From Saccostrea echinata (lineage: Eukaryota), in the NCBI RefSeq assembly GCF_033153115.1, contig NW_026889801.1:13950001-14014000 (forward strand): a stretch of 64,000 nucleotides of DNA, read 5' to 3'. Position 1 is the first letter of the stretch, and each line of letters starts with the position of its first letter. Positions 1 through 12,145 of the stretch are shown in pieces. A program made the position numbers and the translations under genes. The notes beneath the pieces are model-generated. The model worked only from the letters and a program-made list of their open reading frames with translations, ran no database searches and was not told the DNA's origin.

Positions 1-1222
1 TATTTAGTTATATACAAAATTACATCCGGAACAGCCGCGTTATAAAAAAAAAAACCCTTCCTTAAATGTAAAGCGATTTACAAGTGCGGTGTATCCAATC
101 AGTTTCCGCCTGTATCGTATAACGATTTTAGTCATTTGGCGATTTTTTTTTTTGTCGCTCAAAGAGAAGAGTGCCATTTGGGGATCAATCTACCCAGCGT
201 CTCTCTGTGTCTCCATTCGTCTGTTTGTTCTTCTATCTCTACTTATATTTTGAGAACTGTTAAATAAACGGATTTGAGACTTGACCTACTTTTCAAAGAA
301 CGCTATAGAGCATATATACATAAAATGTATATTCGTTGACTTTATTGGATGTCTGTGTTATTTGCCAAGTACAATGTTGTCAAATGAAAAGGTGAATACT
401 ATCAGCGATACAATCCACCTAACGTTGTCATTTGGTTTATTTTCAAGAATACTCTGAACCGTTGTTATATCTCATGAATTTTGAGAATAATGGCTATGTC
501 AACTAGCATTTATTAACATGTTTATAATACACTGCACCTTTTTCCAATGTATTAATGACATCAATAGACAAACTAAAATTTAAATGCTGCCTGTTAGCAA
601 TCTGAAATAAATCGACCTCTTCTGTCAACCAAGATAACCGGTTTTCTTCGACTTAAATGAAAAGACTAAGTGATGTTCTCGAACTGACTGAAAACGCCAT
701 GTGTTTTCCAGTCGTTCTATTTGTTGTTTTTCAAAAATAATAATACCGACTTTTAATCGTAAATCTTGAATATTGTTAATTAATCTCGTATTAATAAAAA
801 TATCCAATGAAATTTTCTCATGTGTGATGTTCCATTTCTTCCGTTAGTTAGTGATCGGTAAAATGATAACAACTTGGGCTTGTGATTCTTGGGGATTGTC
901 AAAAAACTCGAATGAATGATAATTTTTGATTAATTCAGTTTTATTTTTATTGAATTTATATTGATTGCATCTTTTAAGATAAATATTGTTTATCGCTTAC
1001 TTTTTTTTAAATTTATCTGGATTTTTCTCTCCTTTATCTATAATGCTCATATGATTTTCAAAAAAAAAGTAGATGACCACAATAAGTTTTATATATGTTA
1101 TCAATGATGCTATAGTAGGTGTTACATGCGTTCCTCGGAACACTATAGTTTTAAAACAAATATGTTCTTGACAGTTATATTTTGTATAACAAGTTTTATA
1201 GACCCGAATGTCCCTACTGAGA

Positions 1223-1268
<46 letters not shown>

Positions 1269-2410
1269 CGTACAAAGGTTCCTGGATAAGTCACTTTTTA
1301 TGGTCTCGGAGCTTTTTCACAGAACTTCATTTCCTTTGAAAAGAACGATCCTACCTCACTCATCAATTGTATTGAATCTTTTGAAACAAGCAATTGCTTT
1401 GTACATGTGCGTGTAAAAGACAAGTCACTACTGTTTTTTACCCATTATCTTAGACTCTAAAACTATCAATCTGTGCAAAATCAATTGTGTATTTAATGTT
1501 CCAACGCATTTTGTTTCAATTGAAATCCTTAAACCATTAATTAAAAAAAGTGTATCTGTGAAATCCCAAATTTTAAATTAAATTTACTAAATCATTGTAT
1601 GTTAGGTCAAAAAATCACATATGTTAAAGATTTATTTTCGCAGTGCAACACTTAAATGTATTTTAATTTCATTTATCTGCGAAATGGAGTCAAAAACAAA
1701 ATTCAACAGGAGGCCCATGGGCCACATCGCTCACCTGAGCACATTGGCTAGGAAGAAGCAGAAATCAGTTCAGTATTGAAAAGTGGGGAGGGGGGGTGCA
1801 AACTTTAATTTACACTACCTCAGGATGCTTCCATATTTATATTACTAACCATTGTTTTACTGTTCTTCAACAGAAGAATTTTAAAGCTTCCCCCCATGTT
1901 TTCCTATGAAAATCTCTGATCTCTCATTGTGGCCCCACCCTACACACCCTAGATTTGAATCTACTATACCTGAGGATGCTTCTATAATAATATGACTAAT
2001 CATGACTTTGCTGTTCTTGAGCTGAAGGGTTTTTTTTCAAGATGATTCCTAGATATTCTTATGTAAAACTCTGACCTTCCGTTGTGCCCCCCAAACCCTT
2101 GGGGTCATGATTTGAACACACTCGATTCTTAGAAAATGATTTATGAAGAAAAATTTTCGAAGATATATTCAACTAAGCGGTAATTACTTTTGCTATTAGG
2201 GATGGAATATATATACCTTTAATTCTTTATTGCTGATTCAAAATCTAACTTCTTCAGCTAGTTTCTGAATGCCCGAATTTCCCAAAACTTTGCCTCGTAT
2301 ACCCGTTGGTTTGGGAAAACCATTCCAAGGGTTGTAGGTCATTTGATTAAATGAAGTCTTCAATGCGTAAATAATGGTTGCCACCCGGCACCACGTGTGC
2401 CGACGGAGGA

Positions 2411-2483
2411 GGACCTGACACCTGAATCGGTGTTTCGGGCACATTTTGGGAATGTTCCAGGGTCTGCCACTCGTCAGAGGTCC
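2411..2483 (-). ncRNA. Type I hammerhead ribozyme (3' pLTR copy, sense to RT)
   Basis: Minus strand reads GGACCT-CTGACGA-G(T)GGCA...TGCCC-GAAA-CACC-GATTCA-GGTG-TC-AGGTCC: stem I GGACCT/AGGTCC, CUGANGA and GAAA core, stem III CACC/GGTG, GUC cleavage triplet. Confidence 0.9.
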
Positions 2484-2642
2484 AACCCAAATTAAATTCT
2501 AATATACTAGCTGTATAGATATCCGGGTATGGTGTTGCATGCAATCTATTATACTAATAAATATATTAAGTAATTATCAGAATTGAGAATTATTTGTTGG
2601 CGGTAGTTGTAGTGGACATTGTTTCTGTTTTCTGTTCCACTA

Positions 2643-2856
2643 ATAAAGCCTTGTGAATTCGAAGCTGTATGCTTTCGGATATAAGTCGATGAGTGAGACA
2701 ATGTATGTTGTCAAAGAGAATTAATATTCTCTATGTTGCGAGCTTATAGTTAAAGCCTTGTTAATCCGAAACTGTATGGTTTTGGATATATGTCAATGAG
2801 TAAGACAATATATTTTGTCAAAGAGAATTAATATTCTCTATCTTGCGAGCTTGCAG
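2643..2856. repeat. Two tandem ~107-bp repeats in the pLTR, each with an AGAGAAT-N4-ATTCTCT hairpin
   Basis: TAAAGCCTTGT...GTCAAAGAGAATTAATATTCTCTAT.TTGCGAGCTT occurs twice, with a further partial copy at 9346-9411. Confidence 0.8.
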
Positions 2857-3101
2857 CTATTAGCTCGTCTTATTTAGTTGTACAGGTTGTACTTAACGGC
2901 TCTTAGATAGAACTGCAGTTAAAATTCGTTGGGAGCGGGCGGGGCGACCAATCACGTCGTCGCGCTGGAGGAGTTAAGGCGCGTGGCATGAGAGAGATCG
3001 CATTGGCTGTTTATTTAGAGTGTGTATTGGGTTATTGACAGCCGCCTGTTTGCTGATATCTGCTCAGCATGATTCTCGCCATCACGGATTGTCTTTATTT
3101 G

Positions 3102-6100
3102 TTAATTAATATGTTGTCTGTTCGAGTTTAAAAGCTCGTTTAGGTTTCTATGTCGCTTGTATCCAATGATAGGGGGTGTCGGGAATATTGCAGAACACTG
3201 TTTATCTTTTTGGATAATTTTCCAATGTTTGCGTAATATTTTTCCAAGTTTTTTGACTGCGGGGTTGTATTTGGTAACAAGCACAGAGGGTGGTCTATTA
3301 GATTTGGTCTTGCTATTTTTTAGCAGATCTTGTCTATTGATTGTTTCCGTCTCTGAAACAATGCTGTCAATTTCAGAGTCCGAGTACCCCCTTGATAAAA
3401 GTCGTTTCTTGAACTGTGAAATTAATTGTTTTGTTTTGTGTGGGTCAGAGGTGTTCCTCTTATGCCGAATAATTTCACCCTTGATAAATCCTCTGAAGGT
3501 AGCATTGGGGTGTGCACTGCTGCGATGCAGGTACATAAACGTTTCGGTGGGTTTGATGAACGTTTCAACGTCTAAGACTCCAGTCTGTATGAATCTCTGT
3601 CCTTTGTGCACTTTTGTGTCCAAGAACGCAGTCTCATTCAAGTGAATATTGTAAGTAAATTTAAGGTATGTGTGCTCCAGATTTGCAAGTTCAAAAAACT
3701 GCAGTATTTCACTTTCTGTGGCATCAATGACCATAAAACCGTCATCCCTATATCTAAAGTGGGCCACAATCTTATTTCTATGGTTGTATTTTTTGGTAAT
3801 ATTTTCAAGGATATCAAAAAGGCGGAGGTCACATATCTCGGGTGAAGGAACCGCCCCCATGCTGGCCCCTAGTATTTGTTTATAAAGGTGGCCATTAAAT
3901 TCAAATTCATTGTTCTCGAGCAGAATTTTTAATAATTTAATTAGGTAATTGGTATCTGGGATTGGTATTGTGACATCATTTTGTTTCAATTTTGTGAGTG
4001 CTTTTGCTGCAGATTGGATGAGTTCCGTGGCTGTCATGTTGGTATACATCGAAGTTACATCATAGGTAACAAGCCAGGTATCAGGTTTCAAGTGTAGGGA
4101 TTCAACTTTGCTGATAAAGTCTTTGGTGTCTCTAACATAAGTGTGTTGTTTTTGTACTAATGGTACCAGGAAGTGATCTATAAAGTGGCCGATTGGCATT
4201 GTACAGACCCTGAAACGTGCTACTACCCCAAAAAAGCGTGTGACTTTCGTGCACTTTTCGTTTCGTGCAAACAGTGTAGCGTTTCGTGTAAACCGTGCAG
4301 CGTTTCGTGCAAACCGTGTAGCGTTTCGTGTAAACCGTGCAGCGTTTCGTGTAAGCTCCAAAGCGTTTCGTGCAAACCGTGTAGCAAACGTGCGAGAACC
4401 GTGTGAGAAACGTGTGAGAAACGTGCGACTTTCGTGTAAGAACCGTGCGACTTTCGTGCAAGAATCGTGTGAGAAACGTGTAGGATTCATTCGGAAGTCT
4501 TTTTATTTTACAGATGGCTATTGGTGGATCAGCATGTCATTCTGTGTTGTTTGTAATTAATATTATTCGGATATATCATACCGGTGGTATTTTAAGAGTG
4601 AAAAAATACGGAAACAACAAAATAAAATTACTCGTTAATGTATTACAAATTTGTTTGATTTTCTTTCTTTTTTATTTCAATAAAGATGGACAGAAAATGT
4701 GTTAAAAGTAATTAATTATTTGCACATAAATTTTAAGGTATTTGATTCAATACATTTTTTTAAGGGAACAATACTGAACATTTTTTAAAAGAAAATTCAT
4801 TAGAAATTCGGTCTTGTCCTTTTCATTCATTTATTCGAATCTCTTCACCATTCTACAATTATGGGATGTGGGATTACAAGAACATGTCGGTGATTAATAC
4901 AAAATAATAGATAAATATGTCAGGTGTGAAAAATAAAATGCAAAATTTAGTGTGTTGCTATAAATGTGAAGTATTGGAATTCTAGGCCGGGGAGCACAGT
5001 TAATTGATTTTCTTTATAAATGAACATAATTTTCTTATATTACGAGATTTTGATGCAAATTATGAGTCATTTATAGTTTATTTTTATGCAAAAAATTGGT
5101 TGATTAATAATAGTCATATAAATGAATTATAATTCACATGCATCGACAAATACAGGGTTAAATATTTCCGGGAGGGGGGGGGGGCTGATCAAATGAAAAT
5201 ACTGAGTTTTTGTTGTAAACAAGTCTTTTATTGATGATTTTCTTTCTTAAAATAATCTATTGCTTTTTGCGGCGTGCGCCCGATGCACCCCTTAAAAAAT
5301 ATTGTGATCTTCTTTACACTTTCAGCACTTTTCTTACGACTGTGATCAAGGTCATTTACAACAGCGATCACGGCTATCGCGTGCCGGGACTGAAAACTTG
5401 TTCTGCAAGTATCTCTTGTCAATCATAGATAAGATGACAACCGACAATAACGATTGATTTTTAATTTGTGAAATTAAACGGTTTTATTAGTATTTAATGG
5501 GTATAAATAAATACCCGTGGATTTTATGTCTTAAATTTATCCGATTGTCTATAAACAGTGAATTAATTTGCAATTGCATTCGTAAATAAAATAAATCCTG
5601 AACAATCATACATGTATATTAGTTGTTTTATTAATCACGCAGTTCTAGAGCATATTTTTTTTTAGTTTTTAGGACATTAGACATGTATACATATATATTG
5701 AATGTATAAGCCGTGATTATTGATTGCATAAATTATTGATTTTTTTTTGTCTAGACGCGGTTTGAAATGAAGGACTTTAAAAGGTGGTGGGTATAATATT
5801 GCTAGGCGCTTTTATTTGATAAACCAATGCCTCAAAAGAGAACTAAATGATTACAATACTTATCCCCCAACTTCTCTACCATATAAAATTTAAATGATTA
5901 AATAAAGTTTAACTCTGTAATGAAACGATATATTTACCATTTACCATTTTGAATAAAGTGCATTTAATGAATTACATGTATCGGGTCCCGCTACAGATAT
6001 CCCTTTTTTTTCTTAGAACGGGCACTTGTTTCTATAATATTTTTCCACCGATGGTATACTTACTGAAACAAGTGCCCGTTATATTTAGTCATGTACAGAT

Positions 6101-7791
6101 TTGAAGATACAACAGTAAGATGTCGATAATCTACCCCCCCCCCCCCCTTTTCCTACACAATGTTCCTGTTAGATGCAGTTTACATATTACCTTTGCAAAT
6201 TATAAACAGAACCTAATTTTATCAAATGAAATTATTTATTTTTTTTACTAAATCAAAAAATGTATAAATCAATCAATAATTAAAAAAGGGAAAAGAAAAT
6301 CAATCCGTTTACAGAAATCATACGCAATTGAATCATTTTTTTTTTTCAAATCAATAACTGAGTTTATTTGTTAGTTATAAAACGACTATTTATTATCAAA
6401 CTATAATTGGAAAAACATTAAATGCTGTGAAAGATTATGAATTATAAATATGACATTTTTTTCAATGCGTAATTTAGAGTCTAGTGAAAAAAGTTTTGTA
6501 CACAGACGATAATAAGTATTTCACCGGGCGGGTCACATACTCACTGACAACTATGTATTAATTACAATTGAACATTGAGTATTTTATCTGTTAATATAGT
6601 ACTGGTGTAGCGAGTTTTAATCTTAACTTAATCTGAATGATTCCAATTCTTAACTAATCTTTGATTAATCCGTAATAATTGAAATAAAGTCCGAGAGATT
6701 CCGAAAAGAAAATCCAGATCGAGGCCAAAGCGTGCGAGAATCGTGTACAAAGCGTGTGAGAAACGTGTACAAAGCGTTTCGTGCAGGCTTTCGTGCAAAG
6801 CGTTTCGTGTAAACCGTGTAGCGTTTCGTGCAAACCGTGTAGCGTTTCGTGTAAACCGTGCAGCGTTTCGTGCAAACCGTGTAGCGAGCGTGTACCGTTC
6901 GTGCAGCGTGCGTGTGGGGTAGTAGCACGTTTCAGGGTCTGTAGGAGAGGAGCATTGAGAGATAATTGGCCTCCCTGGTATAATCATTCCACGCTGCAGG
7001 GCTTCGGACCCTTTGAAGTTTTCAATGTCAGAGATGCAGATTTTATGTATTTTAGGTAGTAGGTATAATCTGCCAGGCCTGAATGTAAGGGGCTGCGACA
7101 GAAATCTGTGAGTAGTGTTGTCAATGTTAGAATTGATGTGCATTTCACATACAACCTTATTGATCAGATTGTGTATTTCTTGTGTTCTGTCCTTGTGAAT
7201 TGCGGCATAATGAATGCCATCATTTAATTGTCTAAGTCCCTCCGCTACATAATTGGAGCGGTTCTGAACTACAACAGTAGTGGATTTGTCTGCCTTTTTT
7301 ATGATAATATTAGGCTCGTTGCGGAGACTGGTCAGGGCAGATCGTTCTTTTTTAGTCAAATTGTCTCTAAATTTGTGAAAGTGGATTTTACATAGCTCCA
7401 TTTTAGTTGCATAGAGATAATTCTCTAAAGCTGTGTACGGTGTGTTGCCAGGGTTGTATTTAGTATTGATATATAAGGGATGCAATTTTGTATCATTCTC
7501 ATCTGTTTGAAAGAGTATCCTGCATCTCATTTTCCTTGCTAGTTCATTGAAACTACATAGCAAGTTCTGTCTTATGTTTTGCGTCCCAGGTGTGGGAATA
7601 AATTTCAAACCTTTGCTGAGTAATGATATTTCAGCTTCAGACAGGGTATAGTCTGAGAGATTGAGAACATTATTCTTAGCGTTCTCTGACAGACGTTTTG
7701 TTCATCTGATAGTGCGAGCTTTTCTGTTGTTTGCTCGTCTTATTTTATATTTTTTCTTTTTCTGCGTTTTAGAGAGCCTTCTACTAGGCAT
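3102..7791 (-). pseudogene. Penelope-like reverse transcriptase (join 7791-6942, 4201-3102), interrupted by a DNA transposon and one in-frame TGA
   Basis: Motifs VLNLSDYTLS..LLSKGLKFIPTP, KADK, LPKIHK, PGRPIIS, YDVTSMYTN, GASMG, RYRDD, FLD, SAHP, KGEIIR. Removing 4204-6941 plus one TA restores QCSSPT-MPIGHF in frame. The TGA at 7702-7704 is in frame with the upstream basic ORF 7702-7905. Confidence 0.9.
4204..6941. mobile_element. Non-autonomous TIR DNA transposon with TA TSD and 21-bp subterminal tandem arrays
   Basis: 27-bp TIR CAGACCCTGAAACGTGCTACTACCCCA at both ends, TA at 4202-4203 and 6942-6943, and (AAACCGTGYAGCGTTTCGTGY)n arrays at ~4245-4480 and ~6730-6900. No transposase recognised. 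Confidence 0.9.
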
Positions 7792-8570
7792 CTTAACGTA
7801 ATGCCGATCTGGGGAACAGATCTGCATTGATTGCTTAGTATAATGGACGAGGTTATGATCATCAGGGGCTCCTAGGGGGTATAGTTGAGGCGCGCTGATT
7901 GGCATGCGGAGTTATTTCGGGGCGCCGGCAGGCGAGGTAGATTGAAATGAGAGGAGGCGTATTTTTTTTCTAGGAGTGGTATAGAAACGTTTATTTTCCT
8001 GTGAATGACTATATGATGCAATACAGATGCCATGATTACAATGTCCGGCTTAGACTTGTTGCGGGACCGCGTATGAGAAGCGTCGAGGCGAGGGTTAGGT
8101 GTGTTAAAGCCCTATGGCTTCGACAATAATAATTGCTGCAGATGTTCTGAGTTTTGTACATATCTAAATGGTCCGCAGTGTAGAGTTGTGAAATTCAACA
8201 CTGTGGTAATCATAATCAATAATCATAAACGCCCCAAGTACGACAACAATGGGGCAGGTTCGCTGAGGCATGCAGGAAGTAAAACAGAGATGTCGACAGT
8301 GACTCATATAACAAAGCTTTATTGTACATATTTTTTATGCTGAGTTTTTCACAGTACAAGTTATGTTGGTTGGTTTTAAGTCTGTATACTAAACGTACAA
8401 TAAAAGTTTCTTGTTCAGAGAGAATAAAAGGATTAATATGGCGGTAAACCTTACCATACGTTTGGGTAGTCCACGAATATGAATTGTTTTATATACTTAG
8501 TGTCTGTTTACAAACACGTAAGATACGTTCACACCCTAGCAGTTGCAAAAAGGGCAAGGAACTTGCACGG

Positions 8571-9323
8571 TCATTTGTTACTTGGGTCCTGAAGCATTTT
8601 AGTCAGATTTTTCAGTTCTTGAATGATAGATGGTTGATTGGTCCTTGAATTTCTCTGACCATTGCCCCGTCCTCTTGACCATGGTCTTGACTGGCTTGAA
8701 CTCGGGCGTTTCTGCTCGTAGGCTCTCGCAGGAGCTCTCAATTTGTATTGGTTGATCTTTTCAACCCATTTTTGTTTGAGGGCCTCAAGGTCCGAGAAGA
8801 ATTTGGCCCGGTAAGTGCCGGCTTCACGGTCATTAGCTGCTAATTTGCTTTTGGTCTCGGCCACTCTTTTCTTGATTTCCTCATTTTTTTCTCGGATGAT
8901 CTGTGCACATGTATCTTGCAGAGTGCTTATAAGTTTGGTAAGCCCCTTTTGGTGAAGGTCCTTGGTTATGTCCTTAAATAGCTCCTGGCTAACTTCATCG
9001 CAGCTTGCTGTGAAGTTGAGTTGAAAGTTCAGGAAGGCGGGTAGGTTTGGGTTTTCCGCATTGACATCCACCTTGTCTATTGAGTGCTTAATGGTGGCAA
9101 TTCTGTGGCGTTTGAACATTAAATTGTCAACTTCCTTAATAGCGCTGTCCACCGTTTTTTGGTAGTCTTCACTTTTGCTTGCCGATGAGACGAGCGTTGT
9201 CTCATTCAAGTCCAAATCAGGATCACTATCATATTCAGGTGGTGTGTCCTCTATTTTTTGGCCCGGTGTGGGATAGCTGTGTGTTAGGTCAAAGTTGTCC
9301 GTGTCCATATTATTGCTTTCCAT
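8571..9323 (-). CDS. ORF1 of the Penelope-like element: acidic N-terminus, helical/coiled-coil core, basic RGRG tail (putative nucleic-acid chaperone)
   Basis: Intact ~250-aa ORF (ATG at 9323, MESNNM) co-oriented with the RT and lying between the pLTR copies. AATAAA follows on the minus strand near 8320. Confidence 0.7.
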   Translation of the reverse strand: MESNNMDTDNFDLTHSYPTPGQKIEDTPPEYDSDPDLDLNETTLVSSASKSEDYQKTVDSAIKEVDNLMFKRHRIATIKHSIDKVDVNAENPNLPAFLNFQLNFTASCDEVSQELFKDITKDLHQKGLTKLISTLQDTCAQIIREKNEEIKKRVAETKSKLAANDREAGTYRAKFFSDLEALKQKWVEKINQYKLRAPARAYEQKRPSSSQSRPWSRGRGNGQRNSRTNQPSIIQELKNLTKMLQDPSNK

Positions 9324-9637
9324 GTTAGAAGGTAGCAGTGGAGGGATGTATGTTGTCAAAGAGAATTAATATTCTCTATGTTGCGAGCTTATAGTTAAAG
9401 CCTTGTTAATCAACATACATTGTCTCACTCATCGACTTATATCCGAAAGCATACAGCTTCGAATTCACAAGGCTTTATTAGTGGAACAGAAAACAGAAAC
9501 AATGTCCACTACAACTACCGCCAACAAATAATTCTCAATTCTGATAATTACTTAATATATTTATTAGTATAATAGATTGCATGCAACACCATGCCCGGAT
9601 ATCTATACAGCTAGTATATTAGAATTTAACTTGGGTT

Positions 9638-9710
9638 GGACCTCTGACGAGTGGCAGACCCTGGAACATTCCCAAAATGTGCCCGAAACACCGATTCAGG
9701 TGTCAGGTCC
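9638..9710 (+). ncRNA. Type I hammerhead ribozyme (inverted 5' pLTR copy)
   Basis: Same sequence as 2411-2483 in the opposite orientation; predicted cleavage after GTC 9702-9704. Confidence 0.9.
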
Positions 9711-10846
9711 TCCTCCGTCGGCACACGTGGTGCCGGGTGGCAACCATTATTTACACATTTTCAAATGCCCCATACCTACATATTCCTATGTAAAACTTTG
9801 ACCCACTGTAAGCCTCGCCTACCCCCTATGATTTGAAAAAAACTTGAAATATACACTACCTGAGGATACGTCTGTTTTAATATGACGAATAATGGCTTAG
9901 CTATTCTTGAGAAGAAGATTTTTAGACATTACACCTATATATCCCTAAGTTAAACGTTGACTCCTTGTTGTTGCCCTGTCCTACCCCCAGGGGTAATGAT
10001 TGGAACAACTTGAATCTACATTACCTGAGCTGAGGATACTTCTATTATTATATGACTAATCAATGCTTTGCTGTTCTTGAGAAGAACATTTTTAAAGATA
10101 TTTTCCATATAATTCTATATTAAACTTCTCCCCCTCTTGTGGGCCCGCCCTACCCCAGAAGGTTATGATATGAACAAATTTGAATTTAGAGTATGTAATG
10201 ACGCTTTCACTTAAGTTTCATCTTTTCTTGCCCCGTGGTTTTTGAGAAGAAGATTTTTAAAAGATGACACCAAATTTTCACGAATTTTTAATTATCTCCC
10301 CTTGAAAGAGGGCGCGGCACTTTCTTAAATCCCTTTTACCCAAGGATGCTTTATGGCAAGTTTGGTTGAAATTGCACCAGTGGTTCTTGAGAAGAAGTCG
10401 AAAATGTGAAAAGTTTACAGACGACAGACTACAGACGGACACCGGACAATCTTCGATCAGAAAAGCTCACGTGAGTCTTCCGCTCAGGTGAGCTAACAAT
10501 CTTTCAAAATTTTACAGAAACGGAAAAAAAAATAAATTAAATTTTAGAATATGACTTGGACAGAAATGAGTGTTGTATTAAACAATTGGTGTATGCATTT
10601 GTTTTTTTATTTAGACTGATGAAAATACATTGTAGTTCCTCTTGAAAAGGAGTTAAACCAGAGGTCAATTCTCGATTCTTTGATCTTTTCCAGGTGGTAA
10701 ACACTATAAAAGAACAAAAAATCTATTCTTGGTCATGAACTGCTGTAAAGAAGCATCAGCGTTTCACAAGCGCATCTTATTTACACGATTGTACATTTGA
10801 GTTCCTTCATGCACATGTATGCGTACACATGCGTAATTCTATATCA

Positions 10847-11168
10847 AACAAGACGTGTTTGTGAAACACTGATGCCCCCCGTATGGCGACTTATAGCAAA
10901 AGTTAAACTTTCTCAAATACAAATCAAATATGTTGGTACCCAAAGTAAGGTCTTGTCTCGAGGAATATACCTATGAAATATGAAAGCCCTAGCAGCAACC
11001 ATTGAATAGATATAAAAAAGGTTCAGGTAATTTAAGCATCAGGGTCAAGGTCAAATTGTCAAAATAAATGGTGCATAAGAAAAGGCCTTCTCAGAAGAAA
11101 TATACAGGTGAAATATGAAAGCATAAGCACCAATCGTTCAAAAGCTATGACCAAGGTTAAAGTGTTTC

Positions 11169-11199
<31 letters not shown>

Positions 11200-11600
11200 A
11201 TGGATTACAATTGTTGGTATCCAAAGGAAGGTCTTGTCAAAAGGATCATATGTGAAGTATGAAAGCCCTAGCACCAACGGTTCAAAAGTTATGGCCAACG
11301 TTAAAGTTTTCCAAAAGTAAGCCAAACTCCAAGGTCAAGGTCAAAGGGTCAACGTTGTTGGTATCCAAAGAAAGGTCTTGTCACAAGGATTACATTTGTG
11401 AAGTATGAAAGCCATAGCATCAGTGATTCAAAAGTTATGGCGAAGGTTAAAGTTTTTCAAAGTAGGTCAAACTCCAAGGTCAAGGTCAAAAGGTCCATGT
11501 TGTTGGAATCCAAAGGATGGTTTTGTCACAAGAATTACATATTTGAAGTATGAAAGCCGTAGTATCAGATGTTCAAAAGTTATGGCCATGTTAAAGTTTA

Positions 11601-11632
<32 letters not shown>

Positions 11633-11747
11633 AGGGGTCAAAGTTGTTGGTATCCAAAGGAAGGTCTTGTCAAAAGGATTACATATGCTAAGTATGAAAG
11701 CCTTAGCACCAACCGTTCAAAAGTTATGGCCAATGTTAAAGTTTTTC

Positions 11748-11778
<31 letters not shown>

Positions 11779-12145
11779 AAAGGTCAAATATGGTGGTACC
11801 CAAAGAAAGATCTTGTCACAAGAAATACATTTGTGAAGTATGAAAGCCCTAGTACCAATCGTTCAAAAGTTATGGCCAAGGTTAAAGTTGGGAATTTTTT
11901 TTTTGCAAAACTGGGTCAAACTCCAAGGTCAAGGTCAAAAGGTCAAATATTGTGGTACCCAAAGAAAGGTCTTGTCACAAGGAATAAACATCTGAAACAT
12001 GAAAGCCATAGCTCCAAGCAATCAAAAGTTACGGGCAATGTTAAAGTTTTTGCGGACAAACAGACAAATAGCTAGACAGACAGACAGACGGACGGACAGG
12101 GCAAAAACTATATACCCCCGAATCTTCGATACGGGGGCATAAAAA
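10847..12145 (-). mobile_element. Non-autonomous Helentron-type element (HINE) with ~145-bp satellite array
   Basis: AACAAGACGTGTTTGTGAAACAC hairpin plus ATGCCCCC at the left end. AAGTAGGTCAAACTCCAAGGTCAAGGTCAA recurs at 11171, 11315, 11460, 11604 and 11750. GACA/GACG microsatellite and CCCCCG..CGGGGGCATAAAAA at the right end. Confidence 0.8.

What the first reader, a model, noticed from the sequence alone, without database searches (positions are those of the whole stretch)
2170..9759. Endonuclease-less, two-gene Penelope-like retroelement with ribozyme-bearing inverted termini
Seen: the RT ends at YKRHRNLNELLNSNRQHIN*, with AATAAA a few bases later. That is the point where Neptune/Poseidon PLEs continue into a linker and GIY-YIG nuclease. 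No GIY-YIG was found upstream of the RT either (the Naiad/Chlamys position). A separate intact coiled-coil/basic ORF1 precedes the RT, with its own AATAAA and ~780 bp of spacer. Known: EN-less PLEs with coiled-coil ORFs (Athena, Coprina) are mainly telomere-associated. Inference: this may be an undescribed EN-less lineage with a Neptune-like RT and a split-off N-terminal domain. It would insert interstitially (here into a satellite-bearing Helentron) using pre-existing breaks or a trans-acting nuclease.
Basis: partly seen in the sequence, partly recalled or inferred. Interest (0 to 1): 0.8.

Follow-up and report, generated by a model that had tools for sequence, protein, structure and literature searches.

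The report
Endonuclease-less two-gene Penelope retroelement lineage
This is a broken copy of a Penelope-type jumping gene that, like a whole branch of relatives in oysters, mussels and scallops, carries a reverse transcriptase, a small helper gene and a self-cutting RNA but no DNA-cutting enzyme, yet still spreads inside chromosomes.

Summary
On the minus strand, window 9757-2364 is a two-armed insertion of a Penelope-like element (PLE). It has ORF1 (250 aa), a 779-nt spacer and a 649-codon RT ORF that stops 8 residues after the conserved RT-end motif. A type I hammerhead lies in the 3' tail. This copy is dead: it is 5'-truncated, carries a TGA, and is split by a 2.7-kb TA-flanked MITE. An unbroken 99.5% copy (L031) has the same stop.

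No linker or GIY-YIG is found in any frame, although the same HMM hits EN+ controls at 8e-53. Five Saccostrea echinata families (45-50% identical) stop at the same place. About 645-aa relatives occur in seven pteriomorph bivalve species. In the trees, one clade of 54 of 54 EN-minus rows has support 100. Its nearest EN+ relatives carry the Neptune-type CX2-5CxxC linker.

ORF1 is conserved clade-wide and resembles the N-terminal domain of single-ORF PLEs. The "inverted termini" are an inverted partial copy, not part of the element. One family has tails 98-100% identical on at least 14 contigs, so the lineage is active.

Published work mentions only occasional EN-minus families within Neptune. 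The scan had already noted such an element elsewhere in this genome (s1-810016). How it integrates is inferred, not shown.

The parts
9758..9764 (.). Possible target-site duplication, 6 of 7 matching the copy at 2357-2363
   Evidence: Read by eye: plus strand TTTTCAA here against TCTTCAA at 2357-2363.
9411..9757 (+). Inverted arm. It holds the last ~347 nt of the element's 3' tail in reverse orientation, with a type I hammerhead at 9638-9710. The outer end is the fixed element terminus.
   Evidence: 349-nt inverted repeat, 99%; hammerhead; terminus ...TTATTTACACA.
9346..9411 (-). 66-nt direct piece of the tail's 107-nt repeat (equals 2765-2700). It joins the two arms. A 3-nt microhomology lies at the switch into the ORF1 region.
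   Evidence: (100% match to the tail in L031).
8571..9323 (-). ORF1, 250 aa plus stop. It has an acidic disordered N-terminus, three long helices and a basic RG-rich C-terminus. In this 5'-truncated copy the upstream ATG of L031 is missing.
   Evidence: Homologues lie upstream of related RTs. No Pfam match.
7792..8570 (-). Spacer of 779 nt between ORF1 and ORF2, with AATAAA at 8323-8318.
   Evidence: In L031 the contigs of run X1 end 6 nt after the corresponding AATAAA.
6942..7791 (-). ORF2 (RT), N-terminal part. It starts at the clade's conserved basic start and includes the N-terminal PLE motifs. An in-frame TGA lies at 7704-7702.
4204..6941 (.). Secondary insertion: a 2738-bp non-coding TIR element (MITE-like). 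It has 27-bp perfect TIRs, subterminal 11/21-nt repeats, and a TA duplication at 6943-6942 and 4203-4202.
   Evidence: At least 40 copies at 92-94% in the genome.
3102..4201 (-). ORF2 (RT), C-terminal part with the catalytic YRDD, thumb and RT-end motif. The TAA stop is at 3104-3102.
2364..3101 (-). 3' untranslated tail. It holds AATAAA at 3097-3092, a 107-nt tandem duplication at 2857-2644 and a type I hammerhead at 2483-2411. The cleavage site is between 2417 and 2416, and the fixed terminus lies 53 nt further on at 2364.
2357..2363 (.). Possible target-site duplication, partner of 9758-9764.
   Evidence: Read by eye.

Best explanation
Window 9757-2364 (minus strand) is a dead, two-armed insertion of a Penelope-like retroelement. 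It belongs to a large lineage that has no endonuclease.

A full unit, as seen in copy L031, is about 4.96 kb and reads: 5' region, ORF1, spacer, ORF2, 3' tail.
- ORF1 is a helical protein with a basic tail. It is homologous to the N-terminal, putatively nucleic-acid-binding and dimerising domain of single-ORF PLEs.
- ORF2 is a PLE reverse transcriptase that ends exactly where EN+ relatives continue into the CX2-5CxxC linker and GIY-YIG domain.
- The 3' tail carries a complete type I hammerhead with a stable helix III.

Shown:
- the architecture;
- the absence of any nuclease remnant;
- conservation of the layout across at least five families here and in other bivalves;
- monophyly of the EN-minus group on an unrooted tree;
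- fixed 3' termini 53-58 nt past the ribozyme cleavage site;
- frequent head-to-head arms and tandem arrays;
- recent activity.

Inferred:
- Reverse transcription starts at a fixed internal RNA site, as published for an EN+ PLE.
- It is primed by 3'-OH ends that the element does not make itself, most likely the two ends of a chromosomal break. That would give outward-facing arms joined in the middle by template switching or microhomology, usually without a target-site duplication.
- ORF1 protein acts as an RNA-binding or assembly partner of the RT.
- The hammerhead trims multimeric transcripts.
For: Family A copies. L031 is 99.4-99.6% identical, is uninterrupted and has the same stop. The C6, C29 and C1 copies (95-97%) are colinear through the RT end.

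Other families. Families B-E end 5-7 residues after the same motif.

No nuclease. No linker or GIY-YIG appears in six frames of 10 EN-minus loci (best E 0.037, score 6). The controls score 8e-53 and 1e-24. No (TTAGGG)2+ run is present.

Relatives. Relatives of ~645 aa occur in Saccostrea cucullata, S. echinata, Pinctada imbricata, Argopecten irradians, Mytilus edulis, M. galloprovincialis and M. trossulus. PF01541 appears only at 35% identity or less.

Trees. An EN-minus clade of 96 of 160 rows has support 99 (FastTree). A clade of 54 of 94 rows has SH-aLRT 100 (IQ-TREE quick).

ORF1.
- It lies upstream of related RTs in 12 places.
- Families A and B match at BLASTP E 5e-8.
- It is present in metagenome contigs L041, L042, L056 and L060.
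- hhalign against PLE N-terminal domains gives 84.7%, with controls at 0.2% and 0.0%.
- The AF2 model has three long helices.

Hammerhead. It is present in 8 of 8 EN-minus elements examined, with compensatory pairs.

Termini. They are fixed, which fits Frangieh et al. 2024 (main text read).

Activity. All 40 scored family B tails are 98-100% identical and lie on at least 14 contigs.

Insertion form. Arms face outward at 10 loci, and 2 of the 10 show a target-site duplication.
Against: - Nothing shows directly how the DNA 3'-OH is made. One perfect 8-bp duplication (L031) and one 6/7 duplication (the window) point to staggered nicks in at least some events. That fits a nuclease supplied in trans as well as it fits breaks.
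- No empty sites were available, so target deletions could not be scored.
- For three of the ten loci the absence of a duplication was judged by eye.
- The tree is unrooted and holds no named reference PLEs. 'Loss within Neptune' therefore rests on the linker motif of the neighbouring rows.
- Host range beyond bivalves is unknown. Most relatives come from unnamed ENA, Logan or JGI records.
- The ORF1 homology is moderate (84.7%, or 67.3% with the wider alignment).
- The only run holding the element is of guessed kind, and it covers ORF1 only.
- Ribozyme activity was not assayed. Rfam did not recognise the motif.
Confidence: 0.6

Rival explanations
1. The lineage makes its own RT but borrows a nuclease. 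Nicks are made in trans by the GIY-YIG domain of co-resident EN+ PLEs, or by another host or transposon nuclease. Integration is then ordinary target-primed reverse transcription.
For: Intact EN+ Neptune-type PLEs with ORFs of 900-950 aa are abundant in the same genome. L031 has a perfect 8-bp duplication and the window copy a 6/7 one. An EN+ PLE protein cuts and extends both strands in vitro, which also gives two arms.
Against: Eight of the 10 two-armed insertions show no duplication. The one EN+ family examined has a different, minimal hammerhead and tail, and sits beside (TA)n, which none of the EN-minus flanks show. RT identity to the EN+ elements is only 31-36%. The clade is large and old, which is hard to sustain on a borrowed enzyme.
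Confidence: 0.22
2. This is a member of an already described EN-minus clade (Athena or Coprina) that merely sits inside chromosomes here.
For: It has no EN, an upstream helical ORF1 and a hammerhead next to the 3' end, as the Fig. 1 legend of Craig et al. 2021 describes for EN-minus PLEs. Neptune and Coprina group weakly together in the published tree.
Against: There are no telomeric repeat stretches in or beside 10 EN-minus loci. Copies lie megabases inside contigs. The neighbouring rows in the tree are EN+ with the Neptune-type linker. The named hosts are bivalves, whereas the paper calls Athena rotifer-specific.
Confidence: 0.07
3. The copies spread mainly at the DNA level, by tandem or segmental duplication, and the EN-less RT is a relic.
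For: Tandem arrays of 3655-bp units are seen, at least 8 units at C33:6.60-6.63 Mb.
Against: Tails 98-100% identical lie at separate loci on at least 14 contigs with unrelated flanks. Copies show variable 5' truncation and a fixed 3' end. Many copies keep ORFs of 685 aa open. Tandem arrays are themselves a known PLE habit.
Confidence: 0.04
4. The window copy is a deletion derivative of an EN+ element.
For: The ORF stops exactly at the RT/linker boundary.
Against: Every related family and species stops there, and no EN remnant follows. The hammerhead begins 20-60 nt after the stop in all of them.
Confidence: 0.02

Closest known systems
Neptune-clade Penelope-like elements (EN+, C-terminal GIY-YIG preceded by a CX2-5CxxC linker)
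   Same: The nearest EN+ proteins (31-36% identity over ~600 aa) all carry that linker. They share the N-terminal RT motifs, a hammerhead near the 3' end, tandem and inverted insertions and a fixed 'tail' terminus. Some EN+ relatives also have the N-terminal domain as a separate overlapping ORF (L046 and L053; Fig. 1 legend).
   Different: It has no linker and no GIY-YIG in any frame. ORF1 is fully separate, with its own stop and a 220-780-nt spacer. The hammerhead has a 4-8-bp helix III, not the minimal 1-bp form seen in the EN+ neighbour L039. No (TA)n targets are seen.
MjPLE01 of the kuruma shrimp (Koyama et al. 2013), cited as a Neptune-like EN-minus PLE
   Same: It is an EN-minus element said to have arisen within an EN+ clade and to use other 3'-OH ends (Craig et al. 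2021, sections 12 and 17).
   Different: I know it only from that citation. The paper itself is not held and its sequence could not be compared. The present group is a whole clade across bivalves, not a single family.
Athena and Coprina (EN-minus, telomere-associated PLEs)
   Same: They have no endonuclease, an upstream coiled-coil ORF1 in some members, and a hammerhead by the 3' end.
   Different: This lineage has no reverse-complement telomeric repeats and no telomeric location. Its tree neighbours are EN+ Neptune-type rows.
Metazoan non-LTR retrozymes (tandem non-coding repeats with type I hammerheads)
   Same: Both have a type I hammerhead with a stable helix III, as described for invertebrate retrozymes, and a tandem arrangement (abstract of the 2026 preprint).
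   Different: This lineage is coding and 3-5 kb long. No short non-coding derivatives were found for family A, whose tail has 25 matches in the genome.
Endonuclease-independent LINE-1 insertion at DNA breaks (recalled, from no call)
   Same: It is a bicistronic ORF1/ORF2 retroelement that can use existing 3'-OH ends and usually leaves no target-site duplication.
   Different: That is an unrelated RT clade. In LINE-1 this is a rare side pathway, whereas here it would be the only one.

Membership tests
Penelope-like elements (PLE) | PLE-type reverse transcriptase with conserved N-terminal motifs and thumb | tested here: met
   ORF2 aligns end to end with RT+GIY-YIG proteins (E 1e-60 to 1e-88). 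Its relatives carry PF28514, PF26215 and PF00078. The local Pfam copy gave only a sub-threshold RVT_1 match for family B.
Penelope-like elements (PLE) | Hammerhead ribozyme motif near the 3' end | tested here: met
   Found in 8 of 8 EN-minus elements, with covarying helices. Cleavage was not assayed, and Rfam found no hit.
Penelope-like elements (PLE) | Pseudo-LTRs, tandem or inverted partial copies, variable 5' truncation | tested here: met
Penelope-like elements (PLE) | Fixed 'tail' terminus from internal initiation of reverse transcription | tested here: met
   All 7 family A termini end at the same base, 53 nt past the cleavage site. Family B termini fall within 5 nt. The published basis was read.
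Canonical EN+ PLE (Penelope/Poseidon, Neptune, Nematis, Hydra) | C-terminal GIY-YIG endonuclease | tested here: not met
Neptune | CX2-5CxxC linker between RT and EN | tested here: not met
   The ORF stops 1-12 residues after the RT-end motif. No linker is found in any frame.
Neptune | RT groups with named Neptune references | not testable with these tools
   No named reference sequences could be obtained. Only the linker motif of neighbouring rows was used. The figure and supplements of Craig et al. 2021 were not visible.
Naiad/Chlamys | N-terminal GIY-YIG joined to the RT by a CxC domain | tested here: not met
   No GIY-YIG lies upstream of the RT or in ORF1, in six frames. ORF1 has no Pfam match. 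The insertion-in-fingers domain was not examined.
Athena/Coprina | Telomeric location with reverse-complement telomeric repeats at the 3' end | tested here: not met
   No (TTAGGG)2+ or (CCCTAA)2+ run occurs in 10 EN-minus loci. Copies lie megabases inside contigs.
Athena/Coprina | RT groups with Athena or Coprina references | not testable with these tools
   No reference sequences were available.
Non-LTR retrozymes | Short non-coding tandem repeats bounded by type I hammerheads | tested here: not met
   The units are 3.1-5 kb and carry two ORFs.

The most novel reading that the evidence does not exclude
This is a superfamily-level clade of Penelope-like elements that lost its endonuclease long ago and has nevertheless diversified and stayed active inside bivalve chromosomes. 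It would live entirely on DNA ends it does not make, patching double-strand breaks by priming reverse transcription from both ends. It would have a split-off ORF1 chaperone and a hammerhead that can cleave as a single unit rather than as a dimer. That would make it a natural model for nuclease-free retrotransposition, and a candidate autonomous partner of bivalve retrozymes.
Probability: 0.35. Interest if true: 0.75.

Novelty: new variant of a known kind. Interest (0 to 1): 0.6.

Why it matters
Textbook accounts split PLEs into two kinds: EN+ elements that move within chromosomes, and EN-minus elements confined to telomeres. EN loss inside EN+ clades is described as occasional.

Here an EN-minus group is large, ranging from 54 to 96 rows in my trees. 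It is old, with families only 35-50% identical. It occurs in at least seven bivalve species and is currently active, yet it is interstitial. It also has its own consistent anatomy: a separate ORF1 and a full-size hammerhead.

If the clade really depends on pre-existing DNA ends, it offers a natural system for two questions. One is how a reverse transcriptase finds and uses chromosomal breaks. The other is how PLE two-armed insertions form.

For annotation, these ~645-aa 'uncharacterized proteins' in bivalve gene sets can be named.

Tried and rejected
Searches that gave nothing useful:
- Rfam at E<=1 over window 1-14000 found nothing. The hammerhead was found by motif scans instead.
- The local Pfam copy gave no real hit for ORF1 or ORF2.
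- ORF1 gave no result in Foldseek against PDB at E<=0.001 or in the ESM Atlas. Word-based protein searches found only close relatives without Pfam domains (7 and 3 hits).
- ORF2 against PDB sequences gave only chance hits at E 0.2-0.3.
- The ESM Atlas for ORF2 gave clusters with DUF8422 and HTH_animal in several phyla, but without sequences to test.
- The listing of cluster members gave no organism names for 10 deep-branching relatives.
- BLASTP of ORF1 against the N-terminal extension of P0087 gave nothing. The profile comparison did.

An idea I dropped: ORF1 and ORF2 being joined by splicing. It fails because ORF2 starts at a Met conserved across the clade, and because a contig of run X1 runs through the ORF1 stop into the spacer.

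The reads work was weak. One run of guessed kind, kept as contigs only, covers L031 5429-6493 and nothing else. Its 30-nt loose end at an AG|G site is not in the assembly at up to 2 mismatches.

Not visible: the figures and supplementary files S1 and S4 of Craig et al. 2021. These may already list bivalve EN-minus families. Koyama et al. 2013 and Gladyshev and Arkhipova 2007 are not held.

The claim 'not described' rests on searches, and on the passages read.

Full report
WHAT IS THERE.

Read on the minus strand, the region holds the following, in order:
- an inverted block, 9757-9411;
- a 66-nt direct piece of tail sequence, 9411-9346;
- ORF1, 9323-8571, 250 aa;
- a 779-nt spacer with AATAAA at 8323-8318;
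- an RT ORF starting at 7791 and ending with TAA at 3104-3102, directly followed by AATAAA;
- a 738-nt tail ending at 2364.

The two blocks 2362-2710 and 9411-9759 are 99% complementary over 349 nt.

The RT is cut at 6942/4201 by a 2738-bp element with 27-bp perfect inverted ends and a TA duplication. The end of this intruder has at least 40 copies at 92-94% elsewhere in the genome.

The RT also has an in-frame TGA at 7704-7702.

OTHER COPIES.

The genome is 923 Mb. One relative, P0046, is named Saccostrea echinata and lies on a contig of exactly the length of G000 contig C5.

A search with the RT C-terminal half gave 114 matches at E<=1e-10 (112 of 2126 candidates scored). One copy, L031 on contig C33, is 99.4-99.6% identical over the whole element. 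It has no intruder and no TGA, and both frames are open: ORF1 of 271 aa and an ORF2 frame of 689 aa.

It ends at the same stop as the window copy. It also shows what the window copy lacks: a 709-nt 5' region preceded by a direct 156-nt tail piece with its own hammerhead, in other words a pseudo-LTR.

Copies on C6, C29 and C1 (95-97%) are colinear through the RT end. One of them is 5'-truncated inside the RT and again has an inverted tail piece in front.

So the 'inverted termini' are the second, inverted and truncated arm of a two-armed insertion. [quoted passage not shown] 2021, abstract and introduction). They are not ends of the element itself.

NO ENDONUCLEASE, AND NOT BY ACCIDENT.

Four further families in this genome are 45-50% identical in the RT. 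All stop 5-7 residues after the same motif.

I built an HMM from the linker plus GIY-YIG region of 48 EN+ relatives. It hits two EN+ elements of the same genome at 8e-53 and 1e-24. It gives no hit at all in six frames of window 1500-10500. It gives only noise (best E 0.037, score 6) in L031, in families B-E and in three metagenome contigs.

In the large protein collection, 348 proteins scored E<=1e-10 among 8000 scored candidates. The best 105 of the 120 listed carry no GIY-YIG domain. Many are 640-650 aa, and they include proteins named from seven bivalve species: Saccostrea cucullata, S. echinata, Pinctada imbricata, Argopecten irradians, Mytilus edulis, M. galloprovincialis and M. trossulus.

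PF01541 appears in 7 of the 120 listed, all at 35% identity or less. The only named non-bivalve is one of these EN+ proteins, from Branchiostoma.

The exhaustive search of cluster representatives gave 19155 hits at E<=0.001. The same picture holds among its best 150.

TREES.

The first alignment covers the RT core of 160 full-length rows. I dropped rows under 560 aa or with X, and rows with fewer than 540 core residues. In it, 96 rows form one side of a branch with support 99 (FastTree), and all 96 lack EN. Of these, 79 stop within 20 residues and 17 carry a short acidic tail.

A second tree of 94 hand-picked rows (IQ-TREE quick, LG+G4) gives 54 of 54 EN-minus rows on one side, with SH-aLRT 100.

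Outside that clade lie three groups:
- a group of four EN-minus proteins that keep a fused N-terminal domain;
- a small EN+ group;
- the main EN+ group.

Of the 48 EN+ rows in the first tree, 44 carry a CX2-5CxxC motif before GIY-YIG. The literature gives that motif as the mark of Neptune and Nematis.

The trees are unrooted and hold no named references. 'EN loss within Neptune' is therefore likely but not shown.

ORF1.

ORF1 has no Pfam match. No precomputed domain appears in its few database relatives.

Weak but repeated matches lie just upstream of related RT ORFs: 12 places at 22-25% identity and E 1e-4 to 7.5e-4. Families A and B match pairwise at E 5e-8.

Among the 31 metagenome loci fetched, four (L041, L042, L056, L060) also have an upstream ORF that ends in an RG-rich stretch and a K/R-P-Y motif.

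A profile of ORF1 matches a profile of the N-terminal regions of 19 longer PLE proteins. The result is probability 84.7%, E 6.7e-6 over 93 columns. The controls give 0.2% for the reversed template and 0.0% for all 10 column shuffles. A wider ORF1 alignment gives 67.3%.

The AlphaFold model has mean pLDDT 65. It shows a disordered acidic start, three long helices (69-104, 131-181, 187-217) and a disordered basic end. There is no nuclease-like fold and no significant PDB match.

Frangieh et al. 2024 call the corresponding part of an EN+ PLE a putative nucleic-acid-binding domain. They predict that its long helix dimerises.

Some EN+ relatives also carry this domain as a separate overlapping ORF (L046 and L053). 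That agrees with the Fig. 1 legend of Craig et al..

RIBOZYME AND TAIL.

Every EN-minus element examined, 8 of 8, has a hammerhead of this form: CUGANGA, helix II, GAAA, helix III, U-H, helix I. The eight are families A-E, one further family (L010) and two metagenome contigs. The motif starts 20-60 nt after the RT stop in the loci where I read that region.

Features of the helices:
- Helix I pairs change in step (C-G to U-A, A-U to G-C).
- The outer pairs of helices II and III vary in step as well.
- Large insertions sit in loop II or loop III.
- Helix III has 4-8 pairs.

In contrast, an EN+ Neptune-type element of the same genome has the minimal form with a one-pair helix III, and it lies beside (TA)n. 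Cervera and de la Pena 2020 (passages) report that invertebrate hammerheads with a longer helix III self-cleave efficiently, while weak-helix-III forms act as dimers.

All 7 family A termini in hand end at the same base, 53 nt past the predicted cleavage site. Family B termini fall within a 5-nt window about 58 nt past it. This matches the internal initiation of reverse transcription and the 'tail' described by Frangieh et al. 2024.

ACTIVITY AND MODE OF INSERTION.

The family B tail gave 167 first-look candidates. All 40 that were scored are 98-100% identical, and they lie on at least 14 contigs. Many 685-aa ORFs are open. Family A is rare: its tail has 25 matches, 11 of them at 89% or more.

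Arms usually face outward in pairs. Some arms are tandem arrays, for example 3655-bp units with at least 8 copies on C33.

Of the 10 two-armed insertions examined:
- one has a perfect 8-bp duplication (L031);
- one has a 6/7 duplication (the window, by eye);
- eight have none. Four of these were computed. Four were judged by eye.

No telomeric repeats occur. No flank is (TA)n, though one flank is a CA-rich microsatellite.

This pattern fits priming from both ends of an existing break. It does not exclude nicks made by a nuclease supplied in trans.

EXPRESSION.

Only one public run holds part of the element. Its kind is a guess, and it is kept as contigs. Its three contigs cover L031 5429-6493 only. 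That stretch runs from an AG|G site 10 nt into the upstream start of ORF1, through the ORF1 stop, to 6 nt past the spacer's AATAAA.

If the run is RNA, ORF1 has its own spliced, polyadenylated message. The 30 nt in front of the contig are not in the assembly.

LITERATURE.

Craig et al. 2021 say that EN-minus PLEs are generally restricted to chromosome ends. They also say that EN-minus families 'occasionally emerge' within Chlamys and Neptune, naming MjPLE01 (sections 3, 12 and 17). I found no description of a bivalve-wide EN-minus clade with ORF1 in seven full-text searches. The figures and supplements were not visible, and Repbase could not be consulted.

EARLIER NOTES OF THIS SCAN.

s1-810016 described an EN-less, hammerhead-bearing, two-armed PLE insertion on another piece of this genome and reached a similar verdict. 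s1-812290 noted the two hammerheads of this window.

VERDICT.

The element is a real PLE, dead in this copy, of an endonuclease-less two-ORF lineage that is widespread in pteriomorph bivalves and still active here.

It is a new variant of a known kind rather than a new kind. The integration mechanism is the open and interesting part.

Noticed in passing
window 4204-6941: A 2738-bp non-coding TIR element inserted in the RT. It has a TA duplication, 27-bp perfect TIRs beginning CAG, and subterminal arrays of 11/21-nt CGTG-containing repeats. Its end region has at least 40 copies at 92-94% (880 first-look candidates).
   Followed up: partly
window 11043-12051: A tandem array of ~144-bp units (6.9 copies, 80% matches) that also reads as a repetitive ORF (KVGQTPRSRSKG...). 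It is unrelated to the element.
   Followed up: no
window 2110-2363: About 250 nt lie between the element's 3' end and the point where the flanking ~150-170-bp repeat resumes. This stretch matches neither the element nor the repeat, so the target site may have been rearranged or may hold another fragment.
   Followed up: no
L031 5400-5430 and run X1: A contig of run X1 joins 30 foreign letters to L031 position 5429, just after an AG. These letters are absent from the assembly at up to 2 mismatches. The cause could be an upstream exon from an unassembled or different copy, another individual, or a chimeric contig.
   Followed up: partly
proteins P0088, P0095, P0096, P0102, P0104, P0132, P0142, P0147, P0151 and locus L042: A subclade of the EN-minus group carries a 30-70-residue acidic C-terminal peptide ending in a leucine-rich motif (such as LLDALI..L) in place of the endonuclease.
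   Followed up: no
proteins P0087, P0090, P0139, P0140: These EN-minus RT proteins of 628-901 aa stop at the same RT-end motif; three of them (853-901 aa) keep a fused N-terminal domain of 270-320 residues. In the tree they sit beside the two-ORF clade, not inside it.
   Followed up: partly
L039 (G000:C37:3480000-3485000): An intact EN+ Neptune-type PLE (937-aa frame). It has a minimal hammerhead about 510 nt after the stop and a long (TA)n run next to its 3' end.
   Followed up: partly
G000:C33:6603947-6632656: A head-to-head pair of tandem arrays of the EN-minus family B, with 3655-bp units. At least 8 units lie on the minus strand and one on the plus strand.
   Followed up: partly
L046 and L053 (metagenome contigs): EN+ relatives in which an upstream ORF of 308-358 aa overlaps the start of the RT-EN ORF in another frame, as expected for an ORF1 separated by a frameshift.
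   Followed up: no
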